Of a stretch of DNA of 64,000 nt, positions 41,801-64,000 are shown one piece after another. A program made the translations under genes and the position numbers. The DNA is taken from IMG/VR virus record IMGVR_UViG_3300043411_001777, positions 124,001 to 188,000 of that record; one strand, given 5' to 3'. Every line of letters starts with the position of its first letter. Position 1 is the stretch's first letter. A model generated the notes under the pieces. It made no database searches. It was not told the DNA's origin and saw only the letters and a program-made list of their open reading frames with translations.

Positions 41801-44510
41801 TAACGGTACGAACCTGGCCCGCCGATGCCCGTAGCGCGAGAGCGATACGAATTGCGTTGCTGGAGGTCACCGTTGTTGGGTGTCCAGACAAGGTCACAAC
41901 AGCAAGGGTACCACCGCCATTTGTTGCAGTAACCGTTCCGCCATTAAGGGCTGTGTTGAACAACGCCTGAGCAGCAGCATGGTTAATTGCCGCCACCAGC
42001 GAGGTAGCATCCTGAATATCAGTGCCCGACTGGTCGAAAATTTGGCTCGCAAGGGTAGGAGCCCCAGCCGCTGTAAACACGACACCAGCAATAGTGATCG
42101 TATCTGCAACGCTGACGTTAGCAAGAGTTGCCGTTCCAATATCCGCACCCTCGCCAATTACCACCACCCAATCGTTGTAGTAATCGTCAATCCCAGTTCG
42201 AACAGCCGCCTCAAGGGTAATGGTCGTCGTGGTTCCACCAGCCGCCGTTCCCTGGTGCCCGTTAGCAGCCTCATTCAAAGCGTCAACGAACACACCGATG
42301 TCAACACCGTTCTGGGCTTCAACCCGAGCAGTAATCTCGACCCCGTCTACATTGAGGTTGACTTCCTCAGTTGCCGTCAAGGAGTACGACTGACCTACCG
42401 TCGAACCGGTTCCACCTGTATAGGCAATCTCATCGGAGACGAGAACCGCAGGGAAACCTCCACCGTGAGTCGTGGGGTTGGAGAGATCCAAACCACCGAC
42501 ACCAGCAAGAAGCTCTTCCGAGTCCACCACAACCCGGAACTTATCCGACTGCCCCTCAATGATTTCGTAGGGGCCAGAACCAGGGAAGGTGTAACGGGCG
42601 GGCGAAGCATCACGCGCCGCAAACTGCACTGTCACAACTTCTGCAACCGGGCCCGTAAAGTCCGCACCCGAGACACCCTCAAAATGCACGTCCGGGGTTA
42701 GTTCCGAACCACTGGGAAACTCCAACGTCACATTGGTGAGGGAGGAACCCTTCGTTGCCGTCGAGAAAGCAGCTCCGTAAAGCAGCTCCCCATCACTGTC
42801 CGCAATGGTGTACCGACCAGTTCCAGAAGCCCCCACCGCCGTAACAGCTAGGGTGAACTCCCCGTCGCCAAGCTCATTGTAGTAGAAGCTGGCATAGACG
42901 GTTGCGCCGACAGCCACTTCTTCGGCCAGGGTGATTGTGGAACCCTCAACCGAGATAACGTCCACCGGACCGCGCACAAGCGCATCCTGCACACCAAATC
43001 CCCAGTATGCCTTGACAACATCGGGACGGTTTGCAGGCACGTCGATACGATCATTTGCGACCGTCTGGAACAGACTGGAGCCCAATTCCGTTGCCCGACC
43101 ATTTCCAAGAGTCGGCGTGAACGGGAGCAAGAATGCTGTCTTGCTCGCCACACTGCGCCCACTGCTAGAGGTGGTGGTTGCCGTGCAAGGCGTCAAATAG
43201 GTGCGGCTATCGATGAGGGTAGCCGTGATTTGCTGGCTGCCAAACTCAACCGAGCTTGTAGAAGCAGACTCATCCGCGTCTACAACAACACCCGTACCCC
43301 AAACGATCTTGTCGTCGCGCAGGATGAAATCCGCGCCCTGGATATAGTCACTCGACCCGGGGACTGTACCCACCCGCTCAACAGAGGTAATTCCGTAGTT
43401 GGCGAGGTAATCAAACGTATCCTGCCACGTGTTGTGGTAATACGTGATCTTGACACTAGCCCCAACAGCCGGGGCGACTGCAAGGGTAACCGCACGAGTT
43501 GCACCGTCCACGGACTCAACCGTGACCGTGACATTGTCAACCTTAGCCAAAACCTTCGTGGGGTCCGTAGTGGTCAGACCGCCATTAGAACCATCAACGA
43601 TAGGACCGTTGAACGTGTAGAATGTCCGACGACGAGTATCCCCCTGCCCGAAGGCGAACCCAAGGAGTGCATTAGCACTTCCGGAACCCACCGACAAGCT
43701 CTGGTCTGCCTGCAAAAGCAAAGCTGACTTACCGAAGTTGTTGACAAAAGTGGAAGCCTCTAGTGTTCCAGCAGAGGCACTCGACAACACCAGGGCAACC
43801 TCCGCCATCGTGTAATCAGCACGCTCGGGGATTTCAATGTCAAACTCAACCCCGTCAACAGTGATCGTAAAGACGTTGTTGTTTTCCACAACAACGTTGT
43901 CATCCACGTCAAGCTGGTCGGCGTAAAAGTCTAAAGTCTCCGTGCCAGAAACGTCTTCGTCGGAAATGCCGCTCTGAGCCCGAACCTTTGCATTCTCAGG
44001 CGAGACCTGAGCAGAGACATCATCCGTCTGGAGAGTGTCTTTGCGGTTGAAGAAGTAGGTGCACCGCACCAAATCCGTCGATAGGATCGCCTGGGCCAAC
44101 TCAACAACACCCGTCGCACCAGCAACGGAGCGAACGATAACCGGGTCGCCATTGACGGTGACCTTAACATTCTCCGCCGCATTCGTGGTAACCCCACGAC
44201 CATTCCCCGTCACGATTGGGAAATTCGTTACCCGGAATTTGGTAGCTGTGCCATTCCAATTCCCAAGCGTCAACTGACCGGTCCCAGCAGCAACCGCAAG
44301 AACCGCGTGCCCAGTCTGGTCCTCACCCACAACCTGTTGGTCGACAGAGGAAGAAGACCCGCGAACGACTTCAAGGTCACGCTGGCTCAGCGTCTCCGAG
44401 CCCTCACCGATAAAAACAGGCAACTTGAGCGCATCGAGGGCACCGCTAATCGGGTTCTCGAAATTGGTCTCAGTCTTTACACCTGGGGATTCGTACACTT
44501 CATTCGCCAT
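38886..44510 (-). CDS. Contractile tail sheath protein with multiple inserted domains
   Basis: 1874 aa. Sheath N-terminus YESPGVKTET. Sheath C-terminal core: LSLAAYLAFVNGA, ERTSIIG, DPRMRVVYPD, SGMVVLEE...IRVRDAWTT, IADDVQKRIRSVLDRFIG, VSAFFAPVFPLLYVRV. Confidence 0.9.
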   Translation of the reverse strand: MANEVYESPGVKTETNFENPISGALDALKLPVFIGEGSETLSQRDLEVVRGSSSSVDQQVVGEDQTGHAVLAVAAGTGQLTLGNWNGTATKFRVTNFPIVTGNGRGVTTNAAENVKVTVNGDPVIVRSVAGATGVVELAQAILSTDLVRCTYFFNRKDTLQTDDVSAQVSPENAKVRAQSGISDEDVSGTETLDFYADQLDVDDNVVVENNNVFTITVDGVEFDIEIPERADYTMAEVALVLSSASAGTLEASTFVNNFGKSALLLQADQSLSVGSGSANALLGFAFGQGDTRRRTFYTFNGPIVDGSNGGLTTTDPTKVLAKVDNVTVTVESVDGATRAVTLAVAPAVGASVKITYYHNTWQDTFDYLANYGITSVERVGTVPGSSDYIQGADFILRDDKIVWGTGVVVDADESASTSSVEFGSQQITATLIDSRTYLTPCTATTTSSSGRSVASKTAFLLPFTPTLGNGRATELGSSLFQTVANDRIDVPANRPDVVKAYWGFGVQDALVRGPVDVISVEGSTITLAEEVAVGATVYASFYYNELGDGEFTLAVTAVGASGTGRYTIADSDGELLYGAAFSTATKGSSLTNVTLEFPSGSELTPDVHFEGVSGADFTGPVAEVVTVQFAARDASPARYTFPGSGPYEIIEGQSDKFRVVVDSEELLAGVGGLDLSNPTTHGGGFPAVLVSDEIAYTGGTGSTVGQSYSLTATEEVNLNVDGVEITARVEAQNGVDIGVFVDALNEAANGHQGTAAGGTTTTITLEAAVRTGIDDYYNDWVVVIGEGADIGTATLANVSVADTITIAGVVFTAAGAPTLASQIFDQSGTDIQDATSLVAAINHAAAQALFNTALNGGTVTATNGGGTLAVVTLSGHPTTVTSSNAIRIALALRASAGQVRTVTDYVASTGVATVAAWDGGAVTSADEYRIYNPDTLAVLKGATKFNGSTTLAVNKHDKLKLQFTGDSGHSYSDTVDLGNGPFATAALLAAQVQSAIDTSVATAIGGDVTLAGLKIYCVADADGRLEFSVRLPGVDSAGALQFLTGASEAVDFCVLAGLDTAATFGAGQTILIQGPIAKSYEKTMSGTSNKPYDRLMLRNRIVPNAFGSGSIHPQNALDQMALVVRAGSGNTKAGLTVNDFGMGGAGAVVQKASLLGEVGFAGGMNSNAQPLVTFYDGSGTQAANDTFKFTLDGTAVTVNFTSTDTGTATPLGPAAGTSNGSVIDQIIDAMAGIAGSPFGANAAAVFAAGYVVQEGAGIRLVSGESTVAGTVVIGNGVANTKLGFTEGAAGQRVLVDARVLASALNEYRHTTFASWAFDFGAENASPNETFATLALADVLADDAGNEYLHIQSLGETASGIGAASIVLIKDPTVGSVVTDSVLSYNTGLFAEDGDGAVGEAALDGFFVVSSNPDGSGSINESVLNNGTGQDGIVGQTYRDSVTGLTFTVLPRGFNANPSGPWQAYPTGGNATFRFTVSTSFLTNANIPHRALGGVELKVANTANTTIGDTALVTTHERGGSEPSVGDLYYVSYSYTKEDFKTKFYSKQAAVERAFGALSPDNPLSLAAYLAFVNGAVVIGLKQVPRETGSQQASLTSYRAALDELEGPLAGNTNPDIITPLRGDSDTLFTLLQRSNAKMSSPRYESERTSIIGYSAGMTPDRAMISARTLNDPRMRVVYPDSATIVLEDAQGAQREHFLDGYYVAAALVGSVTAPQVDVATPWVGRRLRGFSRLPRRLTVPEMNNLAQSGMVVLEERSPFIRVRDAWTTHQNRDEKLKTLPEIQLIADDVQKRIRSVLDRFIGVKFLPGILPQIEGEIAALLKGLVQAQIIVAYTGIKATVDPVDPTRVVVSAFFAPVFPLLYVRVVLAIRSRL
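41823..42134 (-). repeat. Shared ~105-aa module, copy 1 (inside the tail sheath)
   Basis: TATLANVSVADTITIAGVVFTAAGA...GTDIQDATSLVAAINHAAAQAL...TATNGGGTLAVVTL; matches copies 2 and 3. Confidence 0.9.
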
Positions 44511-44531
44511 GATCCCACCTCTGAAGGAAAC

Positions 44532-44954
44532 TTAGGGCTCTCTACGTTTTATCTGACTCATAGCCAGAGAATTGACACGATCCTTAATAGGCATTTCATG
44601 CGACTGCATAATCCGATAGGAACCGTCCGCTGATTTAGCTAAATCCTCTTTTGTCTTTCCTGGGTTTCCACGCAGAATACGTTGCTTCTCCACGTTCCTC
44701 TTTTCGATGGTTTCCCATCCCTGTTCACTAGAACGACCAATAACACGATCAATGTGTGTGTCTAAATCGTGTATCCCGGTGTTCTGAGGGCCTGCCCCTT
44801 TAACCGCTTGGTTAAACACCCCTGAAATCGTATCCGGCATAAGAGGTTCCAGGACGGTTTTACAGCTTGGGCAGGGCTTACTGCGTGCTGAGATAGGAGC
44901 AGCCTTTTCCCACTTAACTCCACATGCTTCACATTTGTAATTGTAGACTGGCAT
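44532..44954 (-). CDS. FmdB-family zinc-ribbon protein
   Basis: The N-terminus MPVYNYKCEACG...PCPSCK is the FmdB/CxxC_CxxC_SSSS zinc-ribbon signature. Confidence 0.8.
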   Translation of the reverse strand: MPVYNYKCEACGVKWEKAAPISARSKPCPSCKTVLEPLMPDTISGVFNQAVKGAGPQNTGIHDLDTHIDRVIGRSSEQGWETIEKRNVEKQRILRGNPGKTKEDLAKSADGSYRIMQSHEMPIKDRVNSLAMSQIKRREP

Positions 44955-44962
44955 TTCGCACC

Positions 44963-46165: not shown

Positions 46166-46205
46166 ATCGAGTTATCCCTCTCCCTTCCAAGGGGATAACT
46201 CGATT
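46165..46205 (-). promoter_or_regulatory. 14-bp hairpin overlapping the ribosome-binding region and TTG start of the downstream gene
   Basis: Minus strand reads AATCGAGTTATCCC-CTTGGAAGGGAGA-GGGATAACTCGATT. The last T is the first base of the TTG start. The hairpin begins 2 nt after the stop of the 53-aa ORF. Confidence 0.7.
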
Positions 46206-46207
46206 AT

Positions 46208-46369
46208 TCAAGAGGCCTTGCTCTTCCGCTTCTTAGGCTCTTGAGCGGGCTCCCCCACCACTTCGGGTGCTGGCTGTGTCTTAGGGCGTAGAGGTGCCCC
46301 CTTAACGTCTTCGGCTGCCACAACAGGCCGGGTCAACTGATCTGCCTTACGATGCTTACGAACTTTCAT
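46208..46369 (-). CDS. Small basic Pro-rich protein, 53 aa (missed by the ORF track)
   Basis: MKVRKHRKADQLTRPVVAAEDVKGAPLRPKTQPAPEVVGEPAQEPKKRKSKAS. ATGA overlap with the upstream stop and AAGGGG 8 nt upstream. Confidence 0.65.
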   Translation of the reverse strand: MKVRKHRKADQLTRPVVAAEDVKGAPLRPKTQPAPEVVGEPAQEPKKRKSKAS

Positions 46370-47276: not shown

Positions 47277-48022
47277 AGCCCCCCCAGATCATATTGATGA
47301 TAGGCACTTCTCAGACGAGAAATATCCTGAGGGGGCAAATCCCCTCCCTTTTTAATGGTCGCCGCACTCGCTTCTATGAAGGTCAGCAAAGCCCTATCAT
47401 TTTTGGCCCTAGCAGCACGCCAAAGCTCGCGCAAACCTTCCAAAAAGTTCGGCACGTTGTCGATCTTAGTTGAAGGCTTAGGAGCTGGCTTCTGTGCCCG
47501 TGCAACTAACGTCTCAAGCAATTGAACTTGCTTGAGAGTCAAAATCCCACCCCCCGTAAGCTTCTGGTGGAAATCACATAGAATTGGCTCATTCTGCCAA
47601 TCTGCACGGCTTTCGATACGCTTCTTCAAGTCCGAAATGTAGCGGTCCTGGTCCTCAATCAAGGCCAAAGCATCGTAAAAGCCGGCCGACTTGGTGTAGG
47701 CTTCCTGCATTCGATCGAAACCATCCCGCCACGTCTTCTTCCAGTTGATGGTGCGCTTGAAATGCCCCTGGCCCTGGGCCTTTCTGTTGAGGGTCCGCTT
47801 GGTCGCCGTACTGACCAAAGCCAGCTTCATAGAAGCATCCCCTCGACCCATGGCGTCATCCTTTGACCCAATGGTACTGGACAGCGCCACCGCTACATCC
47901 GGGGCTATAGGAAGCCAGTAAACACCCGTGGTTCCCGGCTTCATTTTGACAGGCCCCTTGAGGGGGAGTGTCTTAATCCATAGCTCCAACTCTTCTCTGG
48001 TGATTTGAACGTAAGTGCTCAT
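47273..48022 (-). CDS. Hypothetical protein downstream of the helicase
   Basis: 249 aa, with an ATGA overlap with the helicase stop. Confidence 0.6.
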   Translation of the reverse strand: MSTYVQITREELELWIKTLPLKGPVKMKPGTTGVYWLPIAPDVAVALSSTIGSKDDAMGRGDASMKLALVSTATKRTLNRKAQGQGHFKRTINWKKTWRDGFDRMQEAYTKSAGFYDALALIEDQDRYISDLKKRIESRADWQNEPILCDFHQKLTGGGILTLKQVQLLETLVARAQKPAPKPSTKIDNVPNFLEGLRELWRAARAKNDRALLTFIEASAATIKKGGDLPPQDISRLRSAYHQYDLGGL

Positions 48023-51000
48023 CGCGAACCCCTGATAAACAGTGATGCCAAGCGGCGGGCAAGCTCCTCACCATTTTCATACTGAGCCAGCTCGTCTTCC
48101 TCTTCGTATCCAGTCGGTGGCTCTTCCTCAGGGGGCTCCCAGCCCTCCAAAGACCGTGCAATATCCTCAGGTGCTTCGTCCGCAGGATCCCAACCGTCTT
48201 CATCTTCCCACGGGCCCGAACGCTCCCGAACCCCTTCCTGGGGAGCCGCATCCGTAATTGGAGCCCCGTCCGGAATTAGAGTGCCATCCGGCGTAGCATA
48301 TGGGATACATGCCTCATACAGGAACTGCGAGCTAATCCCAAGCGTGGGGTGCGGAATGTCTAACAAGGTACAGCGATTCTCAGCTCTAGTGATTGCCACA
48401 TAGGCAAGGCGACGCTCACCCCACAAATCCGGGCCTTCTCCCGCCGTGCCGGATTTCCCACATCTCGGGAACCGACCGCCCACAACAGGGACGTACATAT
48501 GAGGAACCTCCAGACCCTTCCAGCCGTGCATGGTCAGGATCTGAACAGCATCCCGGCTATAGGTCTCTTCGTCTTCCTCTGTGCCAACGGACAGTTTCTC
48601 ATTTGCACGCTGTAGCTTGCGGACATAATCCATCGCCGAAGCCATGGACTCATGGTTCTCAAGCAGGCCGATTAGAGGCTCGACAGGACCGAGGGCTAGG
48701 GTTCTAATCTGCTCCTCCGTGACCTGAACCACCTCGCTCTCAGCCAAGAGCAATGCCATCTTCTCTTCGTCCTCAGAAACAGCCTCCATCATCGATTCGA
48801 TGATGGTTTTGCCCTCAAAACCCCTTAGATCCAGAATTTGATTGAGGATTTCTTTGGGGGTGCCTTGGAAAGAGGCAACCTTTGCCAGATTCTCGGTGTA
48901 CTCCGCAAGTAGGTCATTGTAAGACCAACCACGATCGCCACGATTCTTGGAGGGGTAAATCACATTGACCCCTCCGTTAATCAACCACTTCAACCAATTC
49001 TGAGACTGGGCTTTATCCAACAGATTTTGAAGTAGGGAATCTCCGGAAATGCGCGTCTTGGGGAACTTGGTTGCGGAAACAACGATCTCGTTAACTTCTT
49101 CCTTCGGGCCGTCCACACCCAACTCCGCCAAAGTCAACCACTGCACGAGCCCCTTGGTGAGAGGATCTCCGAAGAAAGACACTGGGGAACGGAAAGGAAT
49201 GCCTTTCTTAAGCATTTCCAGCCCGTAGTGGAAAGCCTCAGCATTAGTCCGAACCGCTATACCGAAGTCAGAATACCGGGTGTGCCCAGAGGACTCGTCC
49301 TGAACCAACTCAGCAACCTGAGAGGCCACGTACTTTGCAGCATCTTCAACGGCCGGCTGACGGACCGTTTCAACACGCCCCTCGTCCTTACGCTCAGGAT
49401 TTGCCTTGCAGACAAGGGGGATCCTGTTTTTATTGTGCTGAACAAGACGCTGCGCCGCCTCGACAATCTGCTTACCAGAACGGTAATTCGTATCCAAAGA
49501 CTTGGTGACGAAATCACCCCCCTTAAGATCCGAAAGTGCTGTAAATTGCTCAGGATTTGCCCCGCGGAAGGCATAAATTGCCTGCGAATCGTCCCCGATC
49601 CATGCGTAGGTATCCGCAGTCATCTTCCCATCAGCGCGAGGCTTCAAAGTAGCTGGATCCAGGTAGCCAGCAAGCAAGCCATATAGGTAATACTGAACAG
49701 TATTAGAGTCTTGCGCCTCATCCACGAGGATGACCTTGAACTTGCGCTGTAGGTTAGCCAGCAGCTCAGGTTGCCCGATTAGGGCCTGAACCGTGTCAAT
49801 GAGAATATCGTTCATATCCCCAATGCCCTGGAAAGCAGCCTCGCCATGTGGGCCTTTTAGCCACTCGTATGCGGCATACACCGCAGCGTGGACATTCTCC
49901 TCTCCGCTGTAGTCTACGGTATCCCCGCCCTCAGAATCTCCCGTCGAAGAAGCGACGTCCTTACCGTGCCAGGCCTCCGTAGGCGAGATTGCCAAACCCT
50001 TCATTCGTGTAATGTAGGTCTTGAACTCAGATGGGGGGATCGGCTCCTCACCCTTATCCGTCTTACGGACAAGAGGATTACCTAAGTTGAACCACTCTCC
50101 CGCAGGCTGCTTGAAATAGACATACTCGTCTGCCCGACGACCCTTCTTTAGGTCCGGACCCGTGCTTTCTTCTGCCGAAAGACGCTCCATTGGATGGTCA
50201 ACAGCAGCCCTCTTGGGCATCCCACCCACACCGATGTCAAACTGAACCCCCGTCATGTTGAAAATGTCCTGCATCTGCACTTTCTGCACAGCAGAAAGAC
50301 GCGCGGGACTCTTCAGATTGTCCGTCAACTTCCGGTTAATGGCAAACCACTTGCCATCATCCTCGAAATACGACCGGAGAACCCCCTTCAAGAAAGGATT
50401 CTTCATGAGGTGGAGATTTTGGTAAGCCTTGGAAAGGGCCTGGGAAAAGGTCAGCGTATTTGCCGAAGTGTCAAGGGAGTTGTTAGGAGCTGCCCGTTGC
50501 TGGACCTTAGGATTACGTGCCTGACGGGGATCACCCATATGATGGGGGCGGCCCGTCGCGAAGATGTTGGCAAACATGCTCGTTTCAGGCGGAGGGTTTG
50601 GAGCCGCATCATCCGTCATCTTAACCTGCGCCATCGCAAGCTTCAGCAAGGTGGACTCAATCCACTTTTCCCGCACACCCGCGTAACGCTTCCGTTTGAA
50701 CGAACCGCCCTGCCGGTTGATGATGTTTCCAGCAATGCTGTGGGAGGTGCCGAAATTGCGTAGCGCCTCACTGTCAATGTTAGACCCGAAAGTCTGAATG
50801 CGTTTGATAAGCTCGTGAGCCGCCTTCCGTGTAAAGCTCGTGGCCAGAATAGCCGTGGAAGGAACCCCCAGCTCAGTCATGTGGTATTTGACTTTGGAGG
50901 CCAGAACACGAGTCTTACCCGATCCTGCGGTAGCTGCGATGAGCGCCTTCCCCCGCACCATCATGGCCTCTTCCTGCATCGGAGAGTGTCCAAGCTGCTT

Positions 51001-54439: not shown

Positions 54440-54867
54440 GACTTACCCCCATAAGGAACCCGAACTACATGAGTAAGACCTTCCCACTCAGATTTAGCTA
54501 ACGGGCCCACAACTAATACACGAATCTCGCTGTTAAGCATTTTTGCGACCATGTCTTTGGTCCCCTTTCCGCCCGGAAAGGCCACCCCAATAATCGTATG
54601 GCCCTCTTCACGAAAGACCAAAAGCTTGTCGAGCATAGCGGAATTGCGCACCAGACCCGCAGCGTTACCCAACCGGTCCCATTCAGCCATGACCGTAAGA
54701 AACGGATACCCCCTTTCCTTAGCCCATAGCTGTGCGAGTCTGTCTGCCCCTTTAGCCCCACCTTCTTGGATAGTGAATGGGGTTTTTGCATAAAGCCGAT
54801 CTAACAGACCCCACACAAAAGACTTATCCGCAAAGTTACGGCCTCCCGTAATCTGACAGTACAACAT
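54436..54867 (-). CDS. YspA/DUF2493-like SLOG-family protein
   Basis: Probable ATG at 54867 (TAATG overlap with the thyX stop). ITGGRNF...EGGAKGADRLAQLWA...AEWDRLGNAAGLVRNSAML...VAFPGGKGTKDMV. Confidence 0.85.
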   Translation of the reverse strand: MLYCQITGGRNFADKSFVWGLLDRLYAKTPFTIQEGGAKGADRLAQLWAKERGYPFLTVMAEWDRLGNAAGLVRNSAMLDKLLVFREEGHTIIGVAFPGGKGTKDMVAKMLNSEIRVLVVGPLAKSEWEGLTHVVRVPYGGKS

Positions 54868-56159
54868 TACCGGGCCGTAATGGTCTGGTCGCCACGCCGA
54901 ACATCCCAATCATCCGGGTCCATATCCACGTGGAGTAACACTTCAGGATGGGTGAATGCGAGATCGCCGATCATATTGTGGATGGCTTTACGAAGAGTTG
55001 GGTGTACAGCTTTTCCAGACCGTAGCTCCAAAACATACACCGCCGCTGGTAGTCCATACGTGACCTGGAAAGGTACTTTGAACCCGAGGGGGATGAGATA
55101 CTGAGAGGCAACATCATCCTCAATCGAGGAAATCAACTCAACCTGCTCAGAAATCAGCGCCTCAGCCTCTGCACGCATTGGCCCGAGCTGCTCTAGATAC
55201 CAGGACTCAAACCCCAGATCCGTCGTCAACTTAGGGACTCGGCAGACACCATTTCGGTGGCGCTGAATGTCGCGCCAGGACCCGTAATCCAACTCCCCTC
55301 GGAACGATAGGGATCCAAGCTCCGCCATATGCGCTGGCAATGCCGAACCTCTGGGCCTCGTAATCAGCATTTCGTAGTAGGGCTTTAGAGCGCCATCATC
55401 AATAGTGGACCGGATATCCCACTTCTTTGGAGGGAGAGGCTTATAGCTCCCGTAAGTGGACGCCTCCCAGACAACTCGATCCGGGTACAACTTCTCCCCA
55501 AAGCTTGATGGGTATTGCTCACGCAATAGTGCCAGGGCGCCAGAAGCCAGCTCCCGCACTTCCTGCAAAGGATGCTGGATCAACAGCCCTAAATGGTCAG
55601 AGGCCTGCCGTAGGTTTGTATGCCAGGAGAGCTGGGTGGTTTTACCAGCCGGAAGGAACCCCCGCAAAATGTCAAAGGTACGAGCTTTGATCGCTCGCTC
55701 GTATGTGTCCTCTTTCTCAGAGGACTTACGCGGGTATTGAGACCGAACCCACTCCAAAACCGGAGCTTGCTTTTCCGCATAAAAGCGCTCCCACCTATCA
55801 ATAATCGTCGTAGCCGTTTGCCCAATCGGGTTAACCACAGGGCGATTCGCCATATCGATATAGCGGGTGGAAGTTTCCTGTCCGGAATAGAGCGACCAAT
55901 CCTGAATAGCCTTAGCGGCTAGAATGGAAACGTTCTCGAAAAACAGCGTCGTGGAGCCACAATCCGCAATGGACTTATGCCCATAACCGACAACATACTT
56001 TTCGACGAATTTGCCCGATCCGACCTTACGGACCTTCTCTAGGTGAGTCTCCACACTCTCTCCGGAACGAGAGTAGAGTGCCTGCACCATAGCCAAATCT
56101 TCGGAATGAAGGCCGTCCTCAAGAAAGAGGACGGCCTTACCAACTTGCTTCTTGAGCAT
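54867..56159 (-). CDS. thyX: Flavin-dependent thymidylate synthase, two-domain form
   Basis: Probable ATG at 56159 (MLKKQ; AAGGA upstream). First domain: GYGHKSIADCG, QETSTRY, RGFLPAG, TNLRQ. Second domain: DYGSWRDIQRHR, YLIPLG, ELRSGKAVHP. Confidence 0.88.
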   Translation of the reverse strand: MLKKQVGKAVLFLEDGLHSEDLAMVQALYSRSGESVETHLEKVRKVGSGKFVEKYVVGYGHKSIADCGSTTLFFENVSILAAKAIQDWSLYSGQETSTRYIDMANRPVVNPIGQTATTIIDRWERFYAEKQAPVLEWVRSQYPRKSSEKEDTYERAIKARTFDILRGFLPAGKTTQLSWHTNLRQASDHLGLLIQHPLQEVRELASGALALLREQYPSSFGEKLYPDRVVWEASTYGSYKPLPPKKWDIRSTIDDGALKPYYEMLITRPRGSALPAHMAELGSLSFRGELDYGSWRDIQRHRNGVCRVPKLTTDLGFESWYLEQLGPMRAEAEALISEQVELISSIEDDVASQYLIPLGFKVPFQVTYGLPAAVYVLELRSGKAVHPTLRKAIHNMIGDLAFTHPEVLLHVDMDPDDWDVRRGDQTITAR

Positions 56160-56161
56160 CG

Positions 56162-56323
56162 TTACTTCGTTTCCTTTGGAATGCCATTCTCGACAAGAGA
56201 ACGCAACCACTGCTTGGTGGAAATAGGATTGTCTAACCGTTCAATGTGTTGAAGTAACATCACAACATGCTGTTTGCATTGCAGCAAACAGAGCTGCTTT
56301 ATTTGCTCTCTATCCTCATCCAT
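56162..56323 (-). CDS. Small hypothetical protein, 53 aa (missed by the ORF track)
   Basis: MDEDREQIKQLCLLQCKQHVVMLLQHIERLDNPISTKQWLRSLVENGIPKETK. GAGG lies 7 nt upstream, and the stop is 2 nt before the probable thyX ATG. Confidence 0.65.
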   Translation of the reverse strand: MDEDREQIKQLCLLQCKQHVVMLLQHIERLDNPISTKQWLRSLVENGIPKETK

Positions 56324-56641: not shown

Positions 56642-58972
56642 TTACTTTTCAACCGTGAAATACGCCGAGGAAGCAAAGACGGAAACGAGCCCGCCATCAG
56701 GAACCTCGAAAAAGGTCCCCTCCTTCTCCTCTTTCGAGAGCGCCAAGGCCGGATACTTCTGAGCCAATTCCTCAGCATTCATCACTGCTACCCCATCCGG
56801 AACCAGCCCCGTTGCCCCAACCTGGAAAACAAGATCCCTAAACCCGGCGTAACAAGAATCGATCCAATTACCGATCTGGCGAAGCTCCTCATTAAGAGCG
56901 AGGACCCGATCGTCAGCGGACATAGCCTTTAGCGCCACGTATTCCTTGTCGAAAAAGGATGCGAATTCCTTATCCATGATGTCGTCCGCAGCATTAGGCT
57001 TGCCCTTCTTAGGAGGCCCCTTTTCTACCGAAACATCAGCATCCCAAATACCGTCCAACGTCGCCTTAACGGGCCCGCCACCCCGCTTCATTACATAGCG
57101 AGCATCGAAGAAGGCATTACCCGACTTCATCTTGGATGCAGCCGTAAGCTCAACAGTACCCACCACAACCTCAAAAGAGGTACGGGCGTCCACCTCACCA
57201 TTAGCGATCGCGTCCTCCAACTTAACGTAAGTATTAGTCGTCGGGAACGAAACGTAAAGGGAGGGGCTCAAGTAATGAGCCTTCAGCTCGGCAATCTGCT
57301 CCGCCGTGTATTCCGTGGACGAACCCTTCAAGGTCGCCTTCAAGAGCTTTTGACGAGCGGTCATCCTGAACAGCTCACGAACATCGTTACCAGATGGGAG
57401 CTGGGCTGCCTTATCACCCACCACAGGGAATTCAGACAGCGCGATCTTTACGGGCGCGTTCGGGTCAAACCCATCCACAGGCACGAACCCAGCCTTCGCT
57501 AGACAGGCCCAGGCTCGCTTGTTAGACACCTTCACCATTAGGTGAGAAGCATTGACCGCACCATCACCCACAATCGTGTAGGCGCGGAAATCCGACAGCT
57601 TTAGAGGGATGCCCGCAACCTCATGGATGGGCTTGCCGGTCTTCCGGTTCACCAGCTCAATCGCTTGAGCGATTGTGATGTTTGCCGTCGGGCTACTGCG
57701 GTTCACATCTACAGACGTGACCGACACCCACTCATCAGTCCCAACGGGCTCCGTTTTGAGCGTGGGCTCTTCCAAAGAACCGTCCTCTTTCCGGATACCC
57801 GCAACCCGCTTTAACCCACGACGCTTATAGATAGACTGCAAGTCGGGCAGGTTAATCCGGATGGAATCCTTGTTAGCTTCCAAGATATCCAGGAAGTCCA
57901 ACACAGAGGACCCGCCGAACCCAGGAACCCCATAATTACACACCTCGTCGAGAACCGTGTTGAAGACACGGAACTCGCAAGCCTCAGCAAAGGCCGCCAA
58001 ATCTGGGTTGGTCAACGCCCGATAATTGTCCAGGGTGAACTTCTTATTCCGAGTCGAACACAGGGCAAACTTAGCCTGATTGATCAGGCCTTCCGACAAG
58101 GAAGCCTTAATGAAGGCACATAGCGCCTTCATATCGATATCCTGAGCGTCGGAAGTTGTTCCCGTCACCTTATAGAAGCGCAGGATTCGAGCCCCTTCTG
58201 GGCTGGCACCCCTAACGGTCAGGGCATTACGGCTTCCAAGAATCTTCTTATCCGCATTTGACACATACACCACAAAATCGGCACCCTCAGTAGGGATTTC
58301 GATTGTGGGTACAGTCTTACCTGCCAACTGACTAAACCCAGCGTGCAAGCCCTCGTATACCTGCTTCGCATTTTTGGCCCGAATCGTCGACCCACTCAGC
58401 TTGTTACTGATGCTCGCGAGGAACTGAAAATCACAGTAGTCACTGTAACCTATGGTATTGACGAATACTCCGGGGTGCTTTTGGAGAGCCTGGACGTATA
58501 GATCCACGTCCCTACGCTCTGTCGTAGGGGAATAGTCGTTAGCATAACCATCCGTGTGGAGAGAAATGCACGTCAGCTCACCCTCCCGAACAAGAGATTC
58601 CGCAAGCTTTAGGCTCTGCGAGATACAGGTCATTGCCGTTGCACGAATGCTACGAAGTTCCTTTAGGAAGGAACTGCCCGCCTGCACAATTTCGGCTACG
58701 GGAACACGGGAGAAATGAAGCTTGACGTCCCCATGAGACGAATAGGAAATGAGGGAGACTAGCATTTCCGGCGTGTGGAATTCTTCCAACGTCAGGAGCT
58801 TTTCGATCATAACCTTTGCATCATCGATAGAGCCATACATCGAACCAGAACGGTCGATATCGATGATATGGTGGCCGGGTTGAGCCGTTGCCTGGAGCTG
58901 TGGGACAGGCGACTCCACCGCCTGCCAAAAAGAATGGATCTGCCCATCGTACTTCCGAAGTGTAAACTGCAT
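56642..58972 (-). CDS. von Willebrand factor A (vWA) domain protein with long C-terminal region
   Basis: 776 aa. Intact MIDAS motif DIDRSGSM...MTCISQSL...LHTDGYAND. Confidence 0.85.
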   Translation of the reverse strand: MQFTLRKYDGQIHSFWQAVESPVPQLQATAQPGHHIIDIDRSGSMYGSIDDAKVMIEKLLTLEEFHTPEMLVSLISYSSHGDVKLHFSRVPVAEIVQAGSSFLKELRSIRATAMTCISQSLKLAESLVREGELTCISLHTDGYANDYSPTTERRDVDLYVQALQKHPGVFVNTIGYSDYCDFQFLASISNKLSGSTIRAKNAKQVYEGLHAGFSQLAGKTVPTIEIPTEGADFVVYVSNADKKILGSRNALTVRGASPEGARILRFYKVTGTTSDAQDIDMKALCAFIKASLSEGLINQAKFALCSTRNKKFTLDNYRALTNPDLAAFAEACEFRVFNTVLDEVCNYGVPGFGGSSVLDFLDILEANKDSIRINLPDLQSIYKRRGLKRVAGIRKEDGSLEEPTLKTEPVGTDEWVSVTSVDVNRSSPTANITIAQAIELVNRKTGKPIHEVAGIPLKLSDFRAYTIVGDGAVNASHLMVKVSNKRAWACLAKAGFVPVDGFDPNAPVKIALSEFPVVGDKAAQLPSGNDVRELFRMTARQKLLKATLKGSSTEYTAEQIAELKAHYLSPSLYVSFPTTNTYVKLEDAIANGEVDARTSFEVVVGTVELTAASKMKSGNAFFDARYVMKRGGGPVKATLDGIWDADVSVEKGPPKKGKPNAADDIMDKEFASFFDKEYVALKAMSADDRVLALNEELRQIGNWIDSCYAGFRDLVFQVGATGLVPDGVAVMNAEELAQKYPALALSKEEKEGTFFEVPDGGLVSVFASSAYFTVEK

Positions 58973-59072
58973 ATTGGTGCCTTGTAAGTTGAGTTATGTC
59001 CTTAAGTGGACTTTCAACTTTACCGGACACCCACCACAATCGCACTCAGAACGTTGGTTTTTCAGAGCCACC

Positions 59073-60002: not shown

Positions 60003-60041
60003 AACAAAGCCTTTTCCAGCAATTCCTTATGTCAGTCGGTC

Positions 60042-60941
60042 TTAGATTTCGTTACCGAGATAATCGTATACTACCAGCACTTCATGGGCTCCCGTAGCTG
60101 GGAGCGCATTACCTGCCAAGTCCGTAGCACGGGGCCGTAGGGAGGTAACCTCACCAGCCGCATATGCGAAATTCGGATTCTTGAAGGTCATGGACCCCTT
60201 CATCACAGAAAGATCCCCAACCGCAGCCGACGCATTCAACGAGGTGTTGCGGTAAAAGCGGGGAATGTTTCGGAACCCGGACTCATCCACCGCTATGAAG
60301 CGGCCTGCTTCATAGTAGGTTGAAGTTGCGTTATCGACGGCCGTAGCCCGTTCCGCAGCCGTACGGAACGTCCCACCGTTTGTTGCAATGATGGTGTTCT
60401 TGGCGACGATATAAACTTCACCAGAAAGGATGCGTAGGATTTCTTCTACGGTCCCAAAAGAGTCTCCCTCAGCAAGGCCGGAAGAAGCTACAACACCAGC
60501 GAGCGCGGCATCGATAGCAGCTTCAGTTAGCGGGGTTCCCGCCTCAACAAGCGCAAGGATAGCTTCCGCCATATCCAGAGCTTGTGCTGGGGTGCATACA
60601 GCACCCGCTGCGCCAGCGTCAATACGCTCCCGTAGGTACGCGACCAACCCGTAATCAGCACGGGTCGTGACGTCACTGTCCGCACCGCCACCATCAGTAT
60701 CAGCATCCGCCAATACGACTAGCGTCCGGGTCATCCGGCTTCCCGAAACATAGGCCACCCCAGTGCTATCGAGCACCGTAGCACCAAGTTGGTCAGCGCC
60801 TTGTGGCAGGTATCCGGACTGACCGACGGGGTCGATCGAAGAATTACGCTGTGAGGTGTTGGGCTGAAGATCCTTCAAATGGATATTCATTCCCACCACA
60901 TCATTCCGGCGTGGAACAATGTAGGCCCGTAGAACTGACAT
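60042..60941 (-). CDS. Putative head/neck accessory structural protein, paralog 3
   Basis: 299 aa. It shares N-terminal YI..R.ND...DL.PN.SQ, central GL.AYL and ILRILSGEVY, and C-terminal VVYD..GN motifs with its two upstream neighbours. Confidence 0.6.
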   Translation of the reverse strand: MSVLRAYIVPRRNDVVGMNIHLKDLQPNTSQRNSSIDPVGQSGYLPQGADQLGATVLDSTGVAYVSGSRMTRTLVVLADADTDGGGADSDVTTRADYGLVAYLRERIDAGAAGAVCTPAQALDMAEAILALVEAGTPLTEAAIDAALAGVVASSGLAEGDSFGTVEEILRILSGEVYIVAKNTIIATNGGTFRTAAERATAVDNATSTYYEAGRFIAVDESGFRNIPRFYRNTSLNASAAVGDLSVMKGSMTFKNPNFAYAAGEVTSLRPRATDLAGNALPATGAHEVLVVYDYLGNEI

Positions 60942-61834
60942 TAGACACCTCCAATGACATTGCCGTCATCATCGTAAACAACAACACCGCGCGCAATTCC
61001 TGTAGCAGGGATATGCCCTCCCCCAATATCAAGAGCGGTTCCAGCAGCACCATAGGTGAAACCTTCATTGATCCAGGCGAAGCCATCATCAACAAGGTGG
61101 CTTAGCTGCCCCTCTGCAACGGACATATGCAGCTCACCACAATCGATAATCGTCCGCAACTTACGGAAAGTAACATCCTGGGTTCCGGACTGTGTTGCCG
61201 CAGGAATGCTGACAATGCTAGTCTTATTGTACTTGAACCCGCCAGCAATGGACTTAGTCAAGTTCGGCGCTGTTACGAAAAAGCCGACGGGTGTATGAGT
61301 TGCGCCAGTGCCGGGGAAGGCCCCGCCAGCCCCGGAAACTGCCGAACTTGCAGGAAGCTTGTACACTTCACCACGAAGAATTCGCAGAACGCCAGCAACC
61401 GAACCCGTGGACTCGGAGTTAGCCACCGTGCCGTCAAGGTCCGAGTTGGAGACACCCGCAAACGCATTGATTGCGGTGTTGATGTCGCTAAGCGTGAGGG
61501 GGTTGCCCGCAGCAACCTCATCCAAGATGAGGGCGGCAATTCCATTTGCCATAGTCGCGGTTAGCGTATCATTTGCACCGGCCCCGACCATCTCGACATT
61601 ATCGATCAAGTAAGCGGCGAGGCCGTAGTAGTCCGCATTGGTCTCCAATGCGCCACCACCGGCATCTGTAGTCGCTACTGTGTCATTCTGAACATAGTGC
61701 GACAGATACCCTGTCTGAGGGACAGGAGAGTATGCTGGAATACACTGACTGGAGTTAGGCACCAGATCAGTAATTTGGAGGTCATTTGCATCCAAATCAT
61801 TTCTAGCAAGGACGATATAGGCAAGATCCGCCAT
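60941..61834 (-). CDS. Putative head/neck accessory structural protein, paralog 2
   Basis: 297 aa with an AAGGAG Shine-Dalgarno; same motifs as the other paralogs. Confidence 0.6.
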   Translation of the reverse strand: MADLAYIVLARNDLDANDLQITDLVPNSSQCIPAYSPVPQTGYLSHYVQNDTVATTDAGGGALETNADYYGLAAYLIDNVEMVGAGANDTLTATMANGIAALILDEVAAGNPLTLSDINTAINAFAGVSNSDLDGTVANSESTGSVAGVLRILRGEVYKLPASSAVSGAGGAFPGTGATHTPVGFFVTAPNLTKSIAGGFKYNKTSIVSIPAATQSGTQDVTFRKLRTIIDCGELHMSVAEGQLSHLVDDGFAWINEGFTYGAAGTALDIGGGHIPATGIARGVVVYDDDGNVIGGV

Positions 61835-61845
61835 GGAAATTCTCC

Positions 61846-63024
61846 TTATGCGATGAGGGTGCCGTCATCCGCATAGACGGTGACAAGCCGTTGGCTGGCC
61901 AAATTGACACCAGAAACAGTCAAAGCCTTCTGATACTGGCTAGGAATGAAATTCTGTACGTCACTATCGGGGAAGAGGGTCACGCCCGCAGTGAACCGTG
62001 CTAGATACCCAGCGCTCAGGCTCATTTGAAATGAAGTGCCATCCACAGTGCCGCGGATCGGCTTGCGCTCAACGGACTCGGTATCACCAGTAGCGAGCAA
62101 CGGCCGAATCTCACCCTGAACCATCTGGCTGTCCCAAACAGTGCGGGTACGGGTAAAGGAACCCTGAACCACCGTGTTAAAAATGGTTAGAGGAAGGTCG
62201 GCCGCAACCAAAACTTGGCTGCCCTTGGGGAGGAAGTATTCCCGACCTGCAAGGATCGAAAGGATGTCTGCAACCGTTGCTGTAGATCCACCACCAGTTA
62301 GACTGGTCCCGGCCACCACCGCTGCAAGAACAGTGTTGATATTCGAGGCCGCGAGGGCCTGGCCCGCGTCTACACGCGCAATCAGAGCCGCAGCAGCTTC
62401 GGCAAGGTCCGCAGCAGACCAGGCCATTGTTGCCTTTGTCAGGACTGCACTAGAAACCGCCAAACGGGTTCCGTTGGACGAAACCACCGTACCCTCTGTG
62501 AGGTACGTATTGTCCGAGCCACCCGCCGTGAGGGTAACCACCGCCAGGGTACCACCACCGTTAGTTGCAGTAATAGTCCGACCACCGCCAAGGGCCGCTG
62601 TGATTAGTGCCTGAGTTGCAGCGTGCTGCACCGCAGCAACAAAAGAGGTTGCGTCCTGGATGTCTGTCCCGTTCTGAGCAAACACCTGATTTGGTAGGTC
62701 AGCCGCACCAGCCGCAGTGATTTCAACCCCGGCAATTGTTACCGTATCAGCAACGGATACGTTGGCGAGGGTGACCGTTGCAGTAGGAGCAACCGTTCCA
62801 GCGGGAACAACATTGTCTAGCAAATACGCCTGTAGGCCTCGCGCGTCAGCGACCGTCTTACCCGTTGTGGCACTGTAGCGGACGTTGTTGTTCTGAGCGC
62901 GGTTTACATACCGGTTCTGTGGGGGTGGATCAATAGACCCATTCCGCTGGGAAGCATTGGGGAGCAAGTCCCACAAATGGACAATTCCGTCGGGAAGATC
63001 ATGTGCTAGACAAATGTATGGCAT
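61846..63024 (-). CDS. Putative head/neck accessory structural protein, paralog 1 (carries the inserted shared module)
   Basis: 392 aa with an AGGAG Shine-Dalgarno; same motifs plus a ~112-aa insert. Confidence 0.6.
   Translation of the reverse strand: MPYICLAHDLPDGIVHLWDLLPNASQRNGSIDPPPQNRYVNRAQNNNVRYSATTGKTVADARGLQAYLLDNVVPAGTVAPTATVTLANVSVADTVTIAGVEITAAGAADLPNQVFAQNGTDIQDATSFVAAVQHAATQALITAALGGGRTITATNGGGTLAVVTLTAGGSDNTYLTEGTVVSSNGTRLAVSSAVLTKATMAWSAADLAEAAAALIARVDAGQALAASNINTVLAAVVAGTSLTGGGSTATVADILSILAGREYFLPKGSQVLVAADLPLTIFNTVVQGSFTRTRTVWDSQMVQGEIRPLLATGDTESVERKPIRGTVDGTSFQMSLSAGYLARFTAGVTLFPDSDVQNFIPSQYQKALTVSGVNLASQRLVTVYADDGTLIA
62449..62784 (-). repeat. Shared module, copy 2
   Basis: TATVTLANVSVADTVTIAGVEITAAGA...GTDIQDATSFVAAVQHAATQAL...TATNGGGTLAVVTL...VVSSNGTRLAVSS. 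Confidence 0.9.
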
Positions 63025-63084
63025 ATTCCACTCCTATCAGCTCTCTAACCTAAGAGAAAGCTATAAACCGAAAAGCGCAGGTTT

Positions 63085-64000
63085 TTACTGCGAAGTCGAA
63101 GAATCGAGATTCGCCTGTACCGAAAATGACATTGGGGAAGCCCCCGCCGCAGCCAACACGATTTCCTTGAACCTCCCAAGAATTTCGACGGTCTCACCTT
63201 GACCAATAGAGTACATGGGCAAACCCAACCCTAAGGAATACAAAAGGGTGCCAGACGTTTCGTTGTTCCGGATAAAGCCTTCTCGGCTTCCTCGTGGAAG
63301 AACAATATGAAGCGGGGGTGGGGTAGCAGAGGTCAAATCATACGCCGGGTAATTTCCTGAAGAACATCCCGTATTGGCGGGAGCCGTTCCGCCAAACGTA
63401 TACGACGCCTCCGGCATCGTGAAAAAGTGCGCTGGAGGAACTACGTGAACCGGGCCCCAAATCGGGACACCTGTATTGACAGTGCCACCAACCGTTCTGG
63501 GAGACGTTAACACTTCCTGGAGACGGTAAAAGGCCATCTGGTCGTCGAACGGGACGTTACGGACAAAATCCAAGGTTCCACTAGAAACCGCTAACCGAAC
63601 TCCGTTAGAGCTGACCACAGTTACGGCGTCGTAAGCCGCAGCCGTTGACCCTGCATAGAGAGTCACAACAGCCCCATCAGCAACAGCAGTAACGACCAAA
63701 CCGCCGCCAATAGCCGCAGTGATTAACGCCTGACTTGCGGCGTGGTTAATAGCAGCAGCAAGGGATGTGGCATCTGCCGTATCCGTACCCCCCTGTGAGA
63801 AAATCTGATTCGGTAAGTCAGCAACACCCGCGGCTACAAAGTCAACCCCCTGAATGGTTACCGTGTCAGCGACGTTAACCGAAGCCAACGTTACACTAGC
63901 TTTTGCCACAGAGCTGTTGTTTCCAATGAAATCTTCTACGTTGAACAGTGCCCGTGCTAAGCCCTTATTTCCCTCTCCGTATAGACCAAGCTTACGGTTG
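63085..64000 (-). CDS. Putative structural protein (5' end beyond the window) containing shared module copy 3
   Basis: The track start (GTG at 63909) is probably not the true start. The frame stays open to the window edge (..NRKLGLYGEGNKGLARALFNVEDFIGNNSSVAKASVTL..). Confidence 0.65.
   Translation of the reverse strand, partial: NRKLGLYGEGNKGLARALFNVEDFIGNNSSVAKASVTLASVNVADTVTIQGVDFVAAGVADLPNQIFSQGGTDTADATSLAAAINHAASQALITAAIGGGLVVTAVADGAVVTLYAGSTAAAYDAVTVVSSNGVRLAVSSGTLDFVRNVPFDDQMAFYRLQEVLTSPRTVGGTVNTGVPIWGPVHVVPPAHFFTMPEASYTFGGTAPANTGCSSGNYPAYDLTSATPPPLHIVLPRGSREGFIRNNETSGTLLYSLGLGLPMYSIGQGETVEILGRFKEIVLAAAGASPMSFSVQANLDSSTSQ
63577..63903 (-). repeat. Shared module, copy 3
   Basis: KASVTLASVNVADTVTIQGVDFVAAGVADLPNQIF.QGGTDTADATSLAAAINHAASQAL...VVSSNGVRLAVSSG. 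Confidence 0.9.

What the first reader, a model, noticed from the sequence alone, without database searches (positions are those of the whole stretch)
41823..63903. One plug-in module inserted in frame into three unrelated virion proteins (sheath, head-region paralog, terminal ORF)
Seen in the sequence: the same ~105-115-aa module occurs at 41823-42134 (sheath), 62449-62784 (392-aa protein) and 63577-63903 (terminal ORF). The sheath and 392-aa copies share about 60 of 80 aligned residues by hand, far more than the 392-aa protein appears to share with its own tandem paralogs. Many codons differ synonymously, so this looks like protein-level conservation and not a fresh DNA duplication. The copies are insertions. 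The two paralogs lack the module and have only a short Gly/Ala loop at that point (IDAGAAGAV, EMVGAGANDT). In the sheath it splits a recognisable phage beta-domain (GTAAGGTTTTITL...DDYYNDWVVVIGEG/AGQVRTVTDY...VATV) at its glycine loop. Inference: this is a mobile surface-display or adhesion domain shuffled among sheath, neck and head proteins, which would present one binding or cross-linking activity in many copies along the virion. It has no intein features.
Basis: partly seen in the sequence, partly recalled or inferred. Interest (0 to 1): 0.78.

Follow-up and report, generated by a model that had tools for sequence, protein, structure and literature searches.

The report
Roving surface domain in huge-phage proteins
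A self-contained ~105-residue domain sits in frame inside a giant tail sheath and two other proteins of an uncultured huge phage, and comparison with related phages shows it has been repeatedly inserted, lost, multiplied and homogenised within genomes; it is a new sequence family of an already known kind of phage surface ornament.

Summary
The same 104-112-aa module lies in frame in a 1874-aa tail sheath, in a 392-aa protein and in a 383-aa protein that runs off the window end. The copies are 61-69% identical in protein. Their synonymous sites are saturated.

The insertion reading is also supported. All three host families have clean empty-site orthologs in related huge phages. Other sheath orthologs carry the module at three other sites, one as an array of about 8 copies. 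The 392-aa family carries 0, 1, 2 or 3 copies at one site. Copies cluster by genome and not by host protein: the three own copies form a clade (98/95), and an AU test rejects co-divergence (p = 5e-10).

The module is a widespread family with no match in Pfam, PHROGs or PDB sequences (849 cluster representatives, at least 12 unrelated host families, arrays of up to 9-11 copies). Its predicted alpha/beta fold matches a segment of small myophage sheaths that I infer to be the outward domain III (A-1(L) Z 10.9; Mu, PhiTE, Milano). It also matches a domain of podophage nozzle proteins and flagellin/FliD surface domains.

The "head" and "neck" labels are not supported, and the function is untested. 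It is a new member of a known kind, the promiscuous virion decoration domains.

The parts
38886..44510 (-). Gene for a 1874-aa giant tail sheath protein, host 1 of the module.
   Evidence: The C-terminal 380 aa score 0.97 (200 of 256 shared features) against tail-sheath clusters in the ESM Atlas, and all ten best named hits are sheath families. There is no Pfam, PHROG or PDB sequence hit. Orthologs of 1772-1784 aa occur in five huge-phage records. The downstream gene order is conserved in L005, and a baseplate PHROG hit lies at 23364-25757.
41823..42134 (-). Module copy in the sheath (residues 793-896).
   Evidence: It is absent, with a clean junction, from the sheath orthologs of G001, G002, G003 and G005 and from P0218. 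For G004 the evidence is the contiguous split of the query match.
42135..42251 (-). N-terminal half of the small beta-domain that the module splits (residues about 754-792).
   Evidence: In empty-site orthologs the two halves are contiguous and joined by a short Gly/Ala loop.
41709..41822 (-). C-terminal half of the split beta-domain (residues about 897-934).
61846..63024 (-). Gene for the 392-aa protein, host 2. Its core fold is unknown. The conserved N-terminus (MPYICLA) confirms the start.
   Evidence: There are 86 homologs, aligned as A3. The model has pLDDT 80.8. The host part has no fold or family match.
62449..62784 (-). Module copy in the 392-aa protein (residues 81-192).
   Evidence: The model shows an alpha/beta domain with pLDDT above 90. 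Fold matches cover residues 78-198 only.
63085..64000 (-). Gene for the 383-aa protein, host 3. The window end cuts it (true start at window-equivalent 64236). The host part is predicted to be a jelly-roll/cupin-like beta sandwich built from its N- and C-terminal segments.
   Evidence: The model has pLDDT 67.6, and jelly-roll matches reach Z about 7, which is generic. Orthologs P0107, P0175 and the G005 421-aa frame carry the module at the same site. P0223 (270 aa) lacks it.
63577..63903 (-). Module copy in the 383-aa protein (residues 112-220).
60941..61834 (-). 297-aa tandem paralog of the 392-aa protein, without the module.
60042..60941 (-). 299-aa tandem paralog of the 392-aa protein, without the module.
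11706..22778 (-). 3690-aa ORF with no module here. Its 3922-aa ortholog in phage G005 carries one module, at a point equivalent to residues 2434-2439 of this ORF (about window 15460-15480). This is an empty site in this genome.

Best explanation
The module is an autonomously folding alpha/beta accessory domain of about 105 residues. It belongs to a large family that current family and structure libraries do not recognise by sequence.

In this clade of huge phages (the record is 206 kb and CheckV rates it 39% complete) the module spreads by in-frame duplication or insertion of its coding segment into loops of other proteins. It also expands into tandem arrays, is lost again, and is exchanged or homogenised among the copies within a genome. 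In this phage all three copies descend from the type carried by the 392-aa family.

Inferred function: the module sits on the outside of the sheath, by analogy with the outward additional domains of other sheaths. There, and on the other two proteins, it displays one common binding specificity in many copies. The ligand is most likely a polymer on the host cell surface or in the environment, which would give weak multivalent adsorption as proposed for Ig-like domains on phages.

Shown here: the existence of the domain, its discreteness, its fold class, the presence/absence and copy-number polymorphism, the several insertion sites, the clustering by genome and the purifying selection.

Inferred only: exposure on the virion, virion membership of the 392-aa and 383-aa proteins, and the ligand.

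The confidence of 0.5 is for the whole statement including the inferred function. For the anatomy and the evolutionary part alone I would put it at about 0.85.
For: - Three copies at 61-69% protein identity, with saturated synonymous sites and omega about 0.2.
- Profile search: 849 representatives at E <= 1e-3 and 285 at E <= 1e-10, with arrays of up to 9-11 copies. After masking the module there are at least 12 multi-member unrelated host families plus many singletons.
- Empty-site orthologs exist for the sheath (5 of 5 IMG/VR relatives), for the 392-aa family (262-275-aa forms) and for the 383-aa family (P0223).
- Sheath ortholog P0218 has our site empty but carries modules at two other sites. 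P0221 has about 8 copies at yet another site.
- G005 carries the module in the ortholog of our 3690-aa ORF and not in its sheath.
- Module tree: the own copies form a clade (98/95*) nested among modules of the 392-aa family. The two copies of P0218 form a clade (100/98). In G005 the 383-aa-ortholog copy groups with the giant-ORF copy (95/93*).
- An AU test rejects monophyly of the copies at the 383-aa site (p = 4.9e-10).
- At least 11 copy-number changes occurred among 64 members of the 392-aa family.
- Fold: matches are confined to model residues 78-198. They hit segments of small sheath proteins (A-1(L) 92-186 Z 10.9, PhiTE Z 8.9, Mu 101-212 Z 8.1 at 21% identity, Milano, Bas63, Sf14), podophage nozzle proteins (Z 8.2-9.4), flagellin and FliD D2-D3 (Z 5.6-7.2), a crAss001 capsid chain (7qof_a) and the Patience minor capsid protein.
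- In Mu, sheath domain III 'extends outward' and is the structurally divergent part of sheaths (PMC11915804). Additional sheath domains lie away from the tube and are proposed to serve adhesion or stability (PMC9230969).
Against: - No binding, localisation or expression data exist.
- The sheath assignment rests on language-model features and synteny, with no HMM or solved-structure match.
- The 392-aa and 383-aa hosts have no recognisable virion family, and their gene block is flanked by non-structural genes. A shared intracellular role cannot be excluded.
- Fold scores of Z 8-11 for a small alpha/beta domain are only moderately above the tool's background. Sequence homology to sheath domain III is not shown (no PDB hit with the profile).
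- Columns conserved across the family look structural (Gly, Thr, hydrophobic residues) and no obvious binding motif is visible.
Confidence: 0.5

Rival explanations
1. Structural cement. The modules make contacts between neighbouring subunits (sheath ring to ring, or between the three host proteins) and stabilise an unusually large virion. Within-genome similarity is kept because the copies bind each other or the same structural partner.
For: Additional sheath domains have been proposed to cement the tail, for example phage 812 domain II contacting a neighbouring subunit (PMC9230969). Weak shape matches of both models to capsid cement-protein clusters exist in the Atlas, at TM 0.3-0.44. Clustering of copies by genome fits co-adaptation of interacting copies.
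Against: Five related phages build the same roughly 1775-aa sheath without the module. Copy number ranges from 0 to about 8 at variable sites. Both points are hard to reconcile with a precise lattice contact. The complex prediction of two modules gave no answer and counts neither way.
Confidence: 0.22
2. Docking platform. The module is a common socket for one phage-encoded accessory, such as fibres, whiskers or a decoration protein, which is thereby attached along the tail and at other sites.
For: Phage A-1(L) uses an insertion domain of a baseplate wedge protein to hold its long tail fibre, and the fibre arm lies along a groove on the sheath (PMC10966104). The same fold occurs in podophage nozzle proteins and at baseplates. 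Within-genome homogeneity would fit one shared partner.
Against: No partner gene has been identified. The fold match in T7 gp12 (residues 150-248) could not be assigned to the described fibre-dock domain from the text read. Long tandem arrays of 6-9 copies in other proteins look more like spacers or adhesins than sockets.
Confidence: 0.13
3. Ancient static domain. The module was present in the ancestors of all three host families, has simply been retained, and was deleted in some lineages. There would have been no transfer between proteins.
For: In the 392-aa family the module is nearly universal, and with the paralogs as outgroup the empty forms are nested inside module-bearing clades. That points to loss in that family. 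Synonymous saturation shows that nothing is recent.
Against: The AU test rejects co-divergence at the 383-aa site (p = 5e-10). Module-bearing sheaths are scattered among empty ones, at moderate support (89-94%), and use four different sites. The own copies form a clade nested within modules of the 392-aa type.
Confidence: 0.04

Closest known systems
Outward 'additional' domains of myophage tail sheath proteins, e.g. domain III of Mu gp39. The matched segments (A-1(L) gp9 residues 92-186, also PhiTE, Milano, Sf14, Bas63) are inferred, not shown, to be this domain.
   Same: Best structural matches: Z 7.9-10.9, rmsd 2.4-2.7 A over 84-93 residues, 17-22% identity. These are accessory, surface-facing, non-core parts of the sheath subunit and vary between phages (PMC11915804, PMC9230969).
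   Different: No sequence-level relationship was detected. Here the domain is nested inside another accessory domain of a roughly 1775-aa sheath. It is present in only some orthologs, sits at different sites, and also occurs in non-sheath proteins and in long tandem arrays.
Ig-like (Big_2, I-set, FN3) decoration domains that are promiscuous among phage structural proteins.
   Same: Same evolutionary behaviour: a small autonomous domain added to diverse virion proteins, exchanged horizontally, dispensable for assembly, and proposed to give weak adhesion (discussed in PMC9230969; the original description by Fraser et al. 2006 is from my own knowledge).
   Different: A different fold: alpha/beta with two long helices and not a beta sandwich. 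No Pfam Ig family matches. Insertion into internal loops is common here, whereas Ig-like domains are mostly appended terminally.
Flagellin D2/D3 and FliD D2-D3 surface domains (Pfam Flagellin_IN motif region).
   Same: Fold-level similarity at Z 5.6-7.2 over about 90 residues. The sequence rhythm is similar (strand, helix with a conserved 'AIN', strand). Both are variable, surface-exposed inserts in a self-assembling filament subunit whose core is built from the N- and C-termini.
   Different: No Pfam Flagellin_IN hit at E <= 10. The fold scores are within the tool's background range. The hosts are phage proteins.
Inserted domain of podophage nozzle proteins (T7 gp12 residues about 150-248; also P-SCSP1u, Kp7, HRP29).
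   Same: Z 7.0-9.4, rmsd 2.1-2.6 A over 83-85 residues. It is an insertion in a larger tail protein.
   Different: 11-16% identity. The function of that nozzle segment was not established from the paper read.

Membership tests
Phage tail sheath (Pfam Phage_sheath_1 PF04984 / Phage_sheath_1C PF17482), for the 1874-aa host | Match to the family HMMs or to solved sheath sequences | tested here: not met
   No Pfam hit at E <= 0.1 for the whole protein or at E <= 10 for the C-terminal 504 aa. No PDB sequence hit with the single sequence or with a 6-ortholog profile.
Phage tail sheath, for the 1874-aa host | Sheath-like conserved core at the C-terminus, and tail gene context | tested here: met
   ESM Atlas features: first hit 0.97 with 200 shared features, and ten of ten named hits are sheath families. 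A baseplate PHROG lies downstream, and the gene order is conserved next to the ortholog in L005.
Sheath domain-III-like alpha/beta insertion fold, for the module | Structural superposition covering most of the domain, standing above unrelated hits | tested here: met
   A-1(L) Z 10.9 (93 residues, 2.4 A). Five chains reach Z >= 8 out of 48,161, all of them phage sheath or nozzle proteins, and every match is confined to model residues 78-198. The module in the second model gives the same hits.
Sheath domain-III-like fold, for the module | Detectable sequence homology | tested here: not met
   A profile of 26 modules finds no PDB sequence at E <= 10.
Ig-like phage decoration domains (Big_2, I-set, FN3) | Beta-sandwich fold and a Pfam Ig-family match | tested here: not met
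   The predicted fold is alpha/beta (helices 121-133, 135-145, 173-177). There are no Pfam hits.
Flagellin_IN / FliD D2-D3 | Pfam PF07196 match, or a strong fold match | tested here: inconclusive
   No Pfam hit. Fold Z is 5.6-7.2, within the tool's background range. One Atlas feature hit carries Flagellin_IN in 22% of its members, at a score of 0.88.
Intein (Hint) | Hint domain; Cys/Ser/Thr at the N-junction, His-Asn at the C-junction and a nucleophile at +1; a host reading frame restored by excision | tested here: not met
   No Hint Pfam hit. The C-terminal boundaries (RAS|A, VSS|A, VSS|G) lack His-Asn. The module is a conserved folded domain that also occurs in tandem arrays.
DNA mobile element (IS, MITE, homing-endonuclease cassette) | Terminal inverted repeats, target-site duplication or an endonuclease/transposase ORF | tested here: not met
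   Only chance-level repeats of 11-18 nt lie around the three copies. There is no extra ORF. The DNA of the copies is 60-63% identical with saturated synonymous sites, so any junction signal would have been erased.

The most novel reading that the evidence does not exclude
The module family is maintained in concert within each huge-phage genome because all copies must recognise one lineage-specific ligand. Its repeated re-insertion into new loops of the sheath, of giant tail proteins and of other particle proteins would then be an adaptive way to retune the avidity and geometry of whole-virion adhesion. Under this reading the entire surface of a half-micrometre particle acts as a receptor-binding organ, distinct from the tail fibres.
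Probability: 0.15. Interest if true: 0.8.

Novelty: new member of a known kind. Interest (0 to 1): 0.55.

Why it matters
Huge phages encode very large structural proteins that remain almost unannotated. This work defines one reusable building block of those proteins. It is a domain family with hundreds of cluster representatives and no match in Pfam, PHROGs or PDB sequences.

The work ties that block by fold to the outward domains of well-studied sheaths, to nozzle proteins and to flagellar surface domains. It also documents the block's dynamics in unusually clear form: filled and empty alleles, several insertion sites in one protein family, arrays of 0 to about 8 copies, and within-genome homogenisation.

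That gives a concrete, expressible candidate for testing what accessory domains on phage tails actually bind. It could also be a useful marker for annotating virion proteins in metagenomic megaphages, and it is a natural example of which loops in a sheath tolerate insertions.

Tried and rejected
- Pfam and PHROGs scans of all hosts, of the isolated module and of 16 module-bearing proteins gave nothing for the module.
- PDB sequence searches with the module profile, the sheath C-terminus and a sheath ortholog profile gave nothing meaningful.
- Neither megablast of the sheath gene nor tblastn of the module found a match in 50,697 GenBank phage records. The family is so far metagenome-only at BLAST sensitivity.
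- The search for related loci failed with the module alignment, which has no conserved 7-mer. It also failed with the single 392-aa protein. It worked with the ortholog alignment.
- Identity of the 392-aa core: fold searches in PDB, BFVD and Atlas hit only the module or gave TM 0.3-0.5 to connector, tube and cement models. The Atlas feature search of an empty-site ortholog scored 0.66, which is noise. The core remains unknown.
- The 383-aa core gave only generic jelly-roll/cupin matches at Z about 7.
- The complex prediction of two modules returned 'no answer', which is not evidence either way.
- Flanking DNA repeats and target-site duplications: none beyond chance.
- Genome-specific residue patch: nine scattered positions, uninformative without coordinates.
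- P0207 (1912 aa, module at 797-897) looked like a sheath ortholog because of its length and module position. It carries a NosD beta-helix and shares only the module with our sheath, so I rejected it.

Full report
**Context.** The window is bases 124001-188000 of a 206,089-bp IMG/VR virus record. CheckV rates the record 39% complete, which implies a genome of roughly half a megabase. Nearly all long ORFs lie on the minus strand, and several are giant: 3690, 1874, 1704, 1271 and 1168 aa. The window holds no tRNA gene.

**Observation.**
- They are residues 793-896 of the 1874-aa ORF (38886-44510), residues 81-192 of the 392-aa ORF (61846-63024), and residues 112-220 of a third ORF.
- The window end cuts the third ORF. 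In the full record it is 383 aa, so the module is internal there as well.
- Protein identity is 61-69%. BLASTP E-values run from 1e-20 to 1e-32, and these are the only copies in the record.
- The hosts share nothing else with one another. The 392-aa protein matches its own tandem paralogs (297 and 299 aa) only in local stretches of 40-44% identity. Those paralogs have a short Gly/Ala loop where the module sits.
- At the DNA level the copies are 60-63% identical, and the longest shared exact run is 11-13 nt. pS is 0.67-0.76, which is saturated. Omega is about 0.2.

**Is it an insertion?** Yes, in all three hosts.
- The 392-aa family has 86 homologs. Forms of 262-275 aa lack the module cleanly. 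Forms of 377-448 aa carry one copy at the same site. One 513-aa form carries two, and forms of 616-686 aa carry three.
- On a tree of the host parts, copy number changes at least 11 times among 64 proteins. With the module-less paralogs as outgroup, the empty orthologs are nested inside module-bearing clades. In this family the module is therefore old and has been lost and multiplied repeatedly.
- Sheath orthologs in five huge-phage records (223-536 kb) are 1772-1784 aa long. The query match breaks exactly at residues 787-794 and 890-898. The two halves of a small beta-domain are contiguous in them, joined by a short loop.
- The 383-aa family has three orthologs with the module at the same site. 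One 270-aa ortholog (P0223, seen on 29 contigs of up to 511 kb) lacks it.

**Mobility.**
- Sheath ortholog P0218 has our site empty but carries modules at two other positions, equivalent to about residues 975 and 1195 of our protein. Sheath ortholog P0221 (2479 aa, NCBI metagenome contig, locus L005) has an array of about eight copies at yet another position.
- On the sheath tree, module-bearing proteins are scattered among empty ones. This rests on moderate support (89-94%) and eight taxa.
- In phage G005 the sheath is empty, but the ortholog of our 3690-aa ORF carries one copy that ours lacks.
- In a tree of 42 module copies, the three copies of this genome form a clade (98/95) nested among modules of the 392-aa family.
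- In the same tree the two P0218 copies form a clade (100/98). The G005 copy from the 383-aa ortholog groups with the copy from the giant ORF (95/93).
- An AU test rejects the tree in which the four copies at the orthologous 383-aa site are kept together (p = 4.9e-10). Copies therefore do not co-diverge with their hosts.
- They have either been re-seeded or converted within genomes, most likely from the 392-aa type in this phage. Saturated synonymous sites show that these events are old.
- There are no flanking repeats, no endonuclease gene and no intein features. The mechanism was presumably illegitimate or short-homology recombination followed by selection. That is an inference.

**What the module is.**
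- A profile of 26 copies finds 849 cluster representatives at E <= 1e-3 among 1.84 billion proteins, and 285 at E <= 1e-10. Host lengths run from 133 to 2479 aa, and many hosts carry tandem arrays of up to 9-11 units.
- After masking the module, the hosts fall into at least 12 unrelated multi-member families plus many singletons.
- Pfam, PHROGs and PDB sequences do not recognise the module. GenBank phage records hold no tblastn match.
- The AlphaFold model of the 392-aa protein (31-sequence alignment, mean pLDDT 80.8, module above 90) shows a compact alpha/beta domain.
- Every significant structural match covers only residues 78-198. The matches are listed here:
  - cyanophage A-1(L) sheath residues 92-186 (Z 10.9);
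  - sheaths of PhiTE (Z 8.9), Mu gp39 residues 101-212 (Z 8.1, 21% identity), Milano, Bas63 and Sf14;
  - podophage nozzle proteins at about residues 150-248 (Z 7.0-9.4);
  - P. aeruginosa flagellin and FliD D2-D3 (Z 5.6-7.2);
  - a crAss001 capsid chain and the Patience minor capsid protein.
- The module in the separately modelled 383-aa protein gives the same hits.
- In Mu, sheath domain III "extends outward" and is the divergent part of sheaths (PMC11915804). Additional sheath domains in general lie away from the tube and are thought to aid adhesion or stability (PMC9230969).
- I infer, but did not verify residue by residue, that the matched segments are those outward domains.

**The hosts.**
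- The 1874-aa protein is supported as a tail sheath by ESM Atlas features of its C-terminal 380 aa (0.97, all named hits are sheath families). The conserved downstream gene order and a baseplate PHROG hit at 23364-25757 agree. No HMM or PDB sequence match supports it.
- The core of the 392-aa family has no fold or family match.
- The 383-aa core is predicted to be a jelly-roll/cupin-like sandwich formed by its N- and C-terminal segments. The matches are only generic, at Z about 7.
- The gene block that holds these two proteins is flanked by SWIM, poly(A)-polymerase-like, SNF2, ThyX and UvrD genes.

**Function.**
- Nothing here measures function. I favour multivalent display of one binding specificity on the particle surface (0.5).
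- The reasons are as follows: the domain is dispensable in close relatives; its copy number and site are free to vary; it also forms long arrays; the fold class is used on exposed surfaces of tails and flagella; and copies within a genome stay alike.
- The rivals are inter-subunit cement (0.22) and a docking socket for a shared accessory (0.13). A static ancient domain (0.04) is largely refuted.
- The complex prediction of two modules returned no answer.

**Verdict.** The finding is real and the insertion/mobility interpretation holds up. It is a new sequence family of a known kind, the promiscuous accessory decoration domains of phage virion proteins. Its evolutionary dynamics are unusually well documented. 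Interest is moderate.

Noticed in passing
window 38886-44510; loci L064-L071, L005: The tail sheath subunit is about 1775-1874 aa and is conserved at that size in at least five other huge-phage records (2479 aa in one). A survey of 112 sheaths reports 426-713 aa for its two-domain class (PMC9230969). About 1400 residues must form accessory domains.
   Followed up: partly
window 11706-22778: A 3690-aa ORF in the tail block. Its 3922-aa ortholog in G005 is 34-43% identical over nearly the full length. The function was not examined (tape measure, fibre or other).
   Followed up: partly
window 44532-44954; L005 9347-9811; L004 2200-2574: A small Zn-ribbon (FmdB-like, Zn_ribbon_8) gene lies immediately upstream of the sheath gene here and in L005. 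In L004 it lies immediately upstream of the 383-aa ortholog. It may be a conserved late-gene regulator or a structural partner.
   Followed up: no
window 48019-51834: A UvrD-like helicase of 1271 aa. Its N-terminal helicase domain (profile positions 5-267) is spread over residues 287-768, so it holds a large insertion. A Hint-domain protein occurs in the related contig L005, but no intein was looked for here.
   Followed up: no
window 54867-56210 and 56642-58972: A ThyX homolog of 447 aa, longer than the 191-position Pfam domain it matches, and a 776-aa VWA-domain protein (phrog_2426). Both lie between the tail block and the block with the module-bearing paralogs.
   Followed up: no
window 63085-64000: The ORF lister gives a 274-aa ORF starting at GTG 63909. 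The real gene continues past the window end to 383 aa. The public gene call for the 392-aa protein (P0001, 325 aa) is also shorter than the ortholog-supported start at 63024.
   Followed up: yes
G000 188591-189910 (locus L074 591-1910): The 439-aa protein upstream of the 383-aa gene has a very basic, low-complexity N-terminal half and a C-terminal SWIM zinc finger.
   Followed up: no
window 41709-42251 and orthologs: The small beta-domain split by the module has a recurring motif (aromatic-rich strand, Gly loop, 'GQxRTIxxY', 'ATV', 'W', 'YxIYNP'). It appears to be one of many repeated accessory domains in the giant sheath and was not classified.
   Followed up: no
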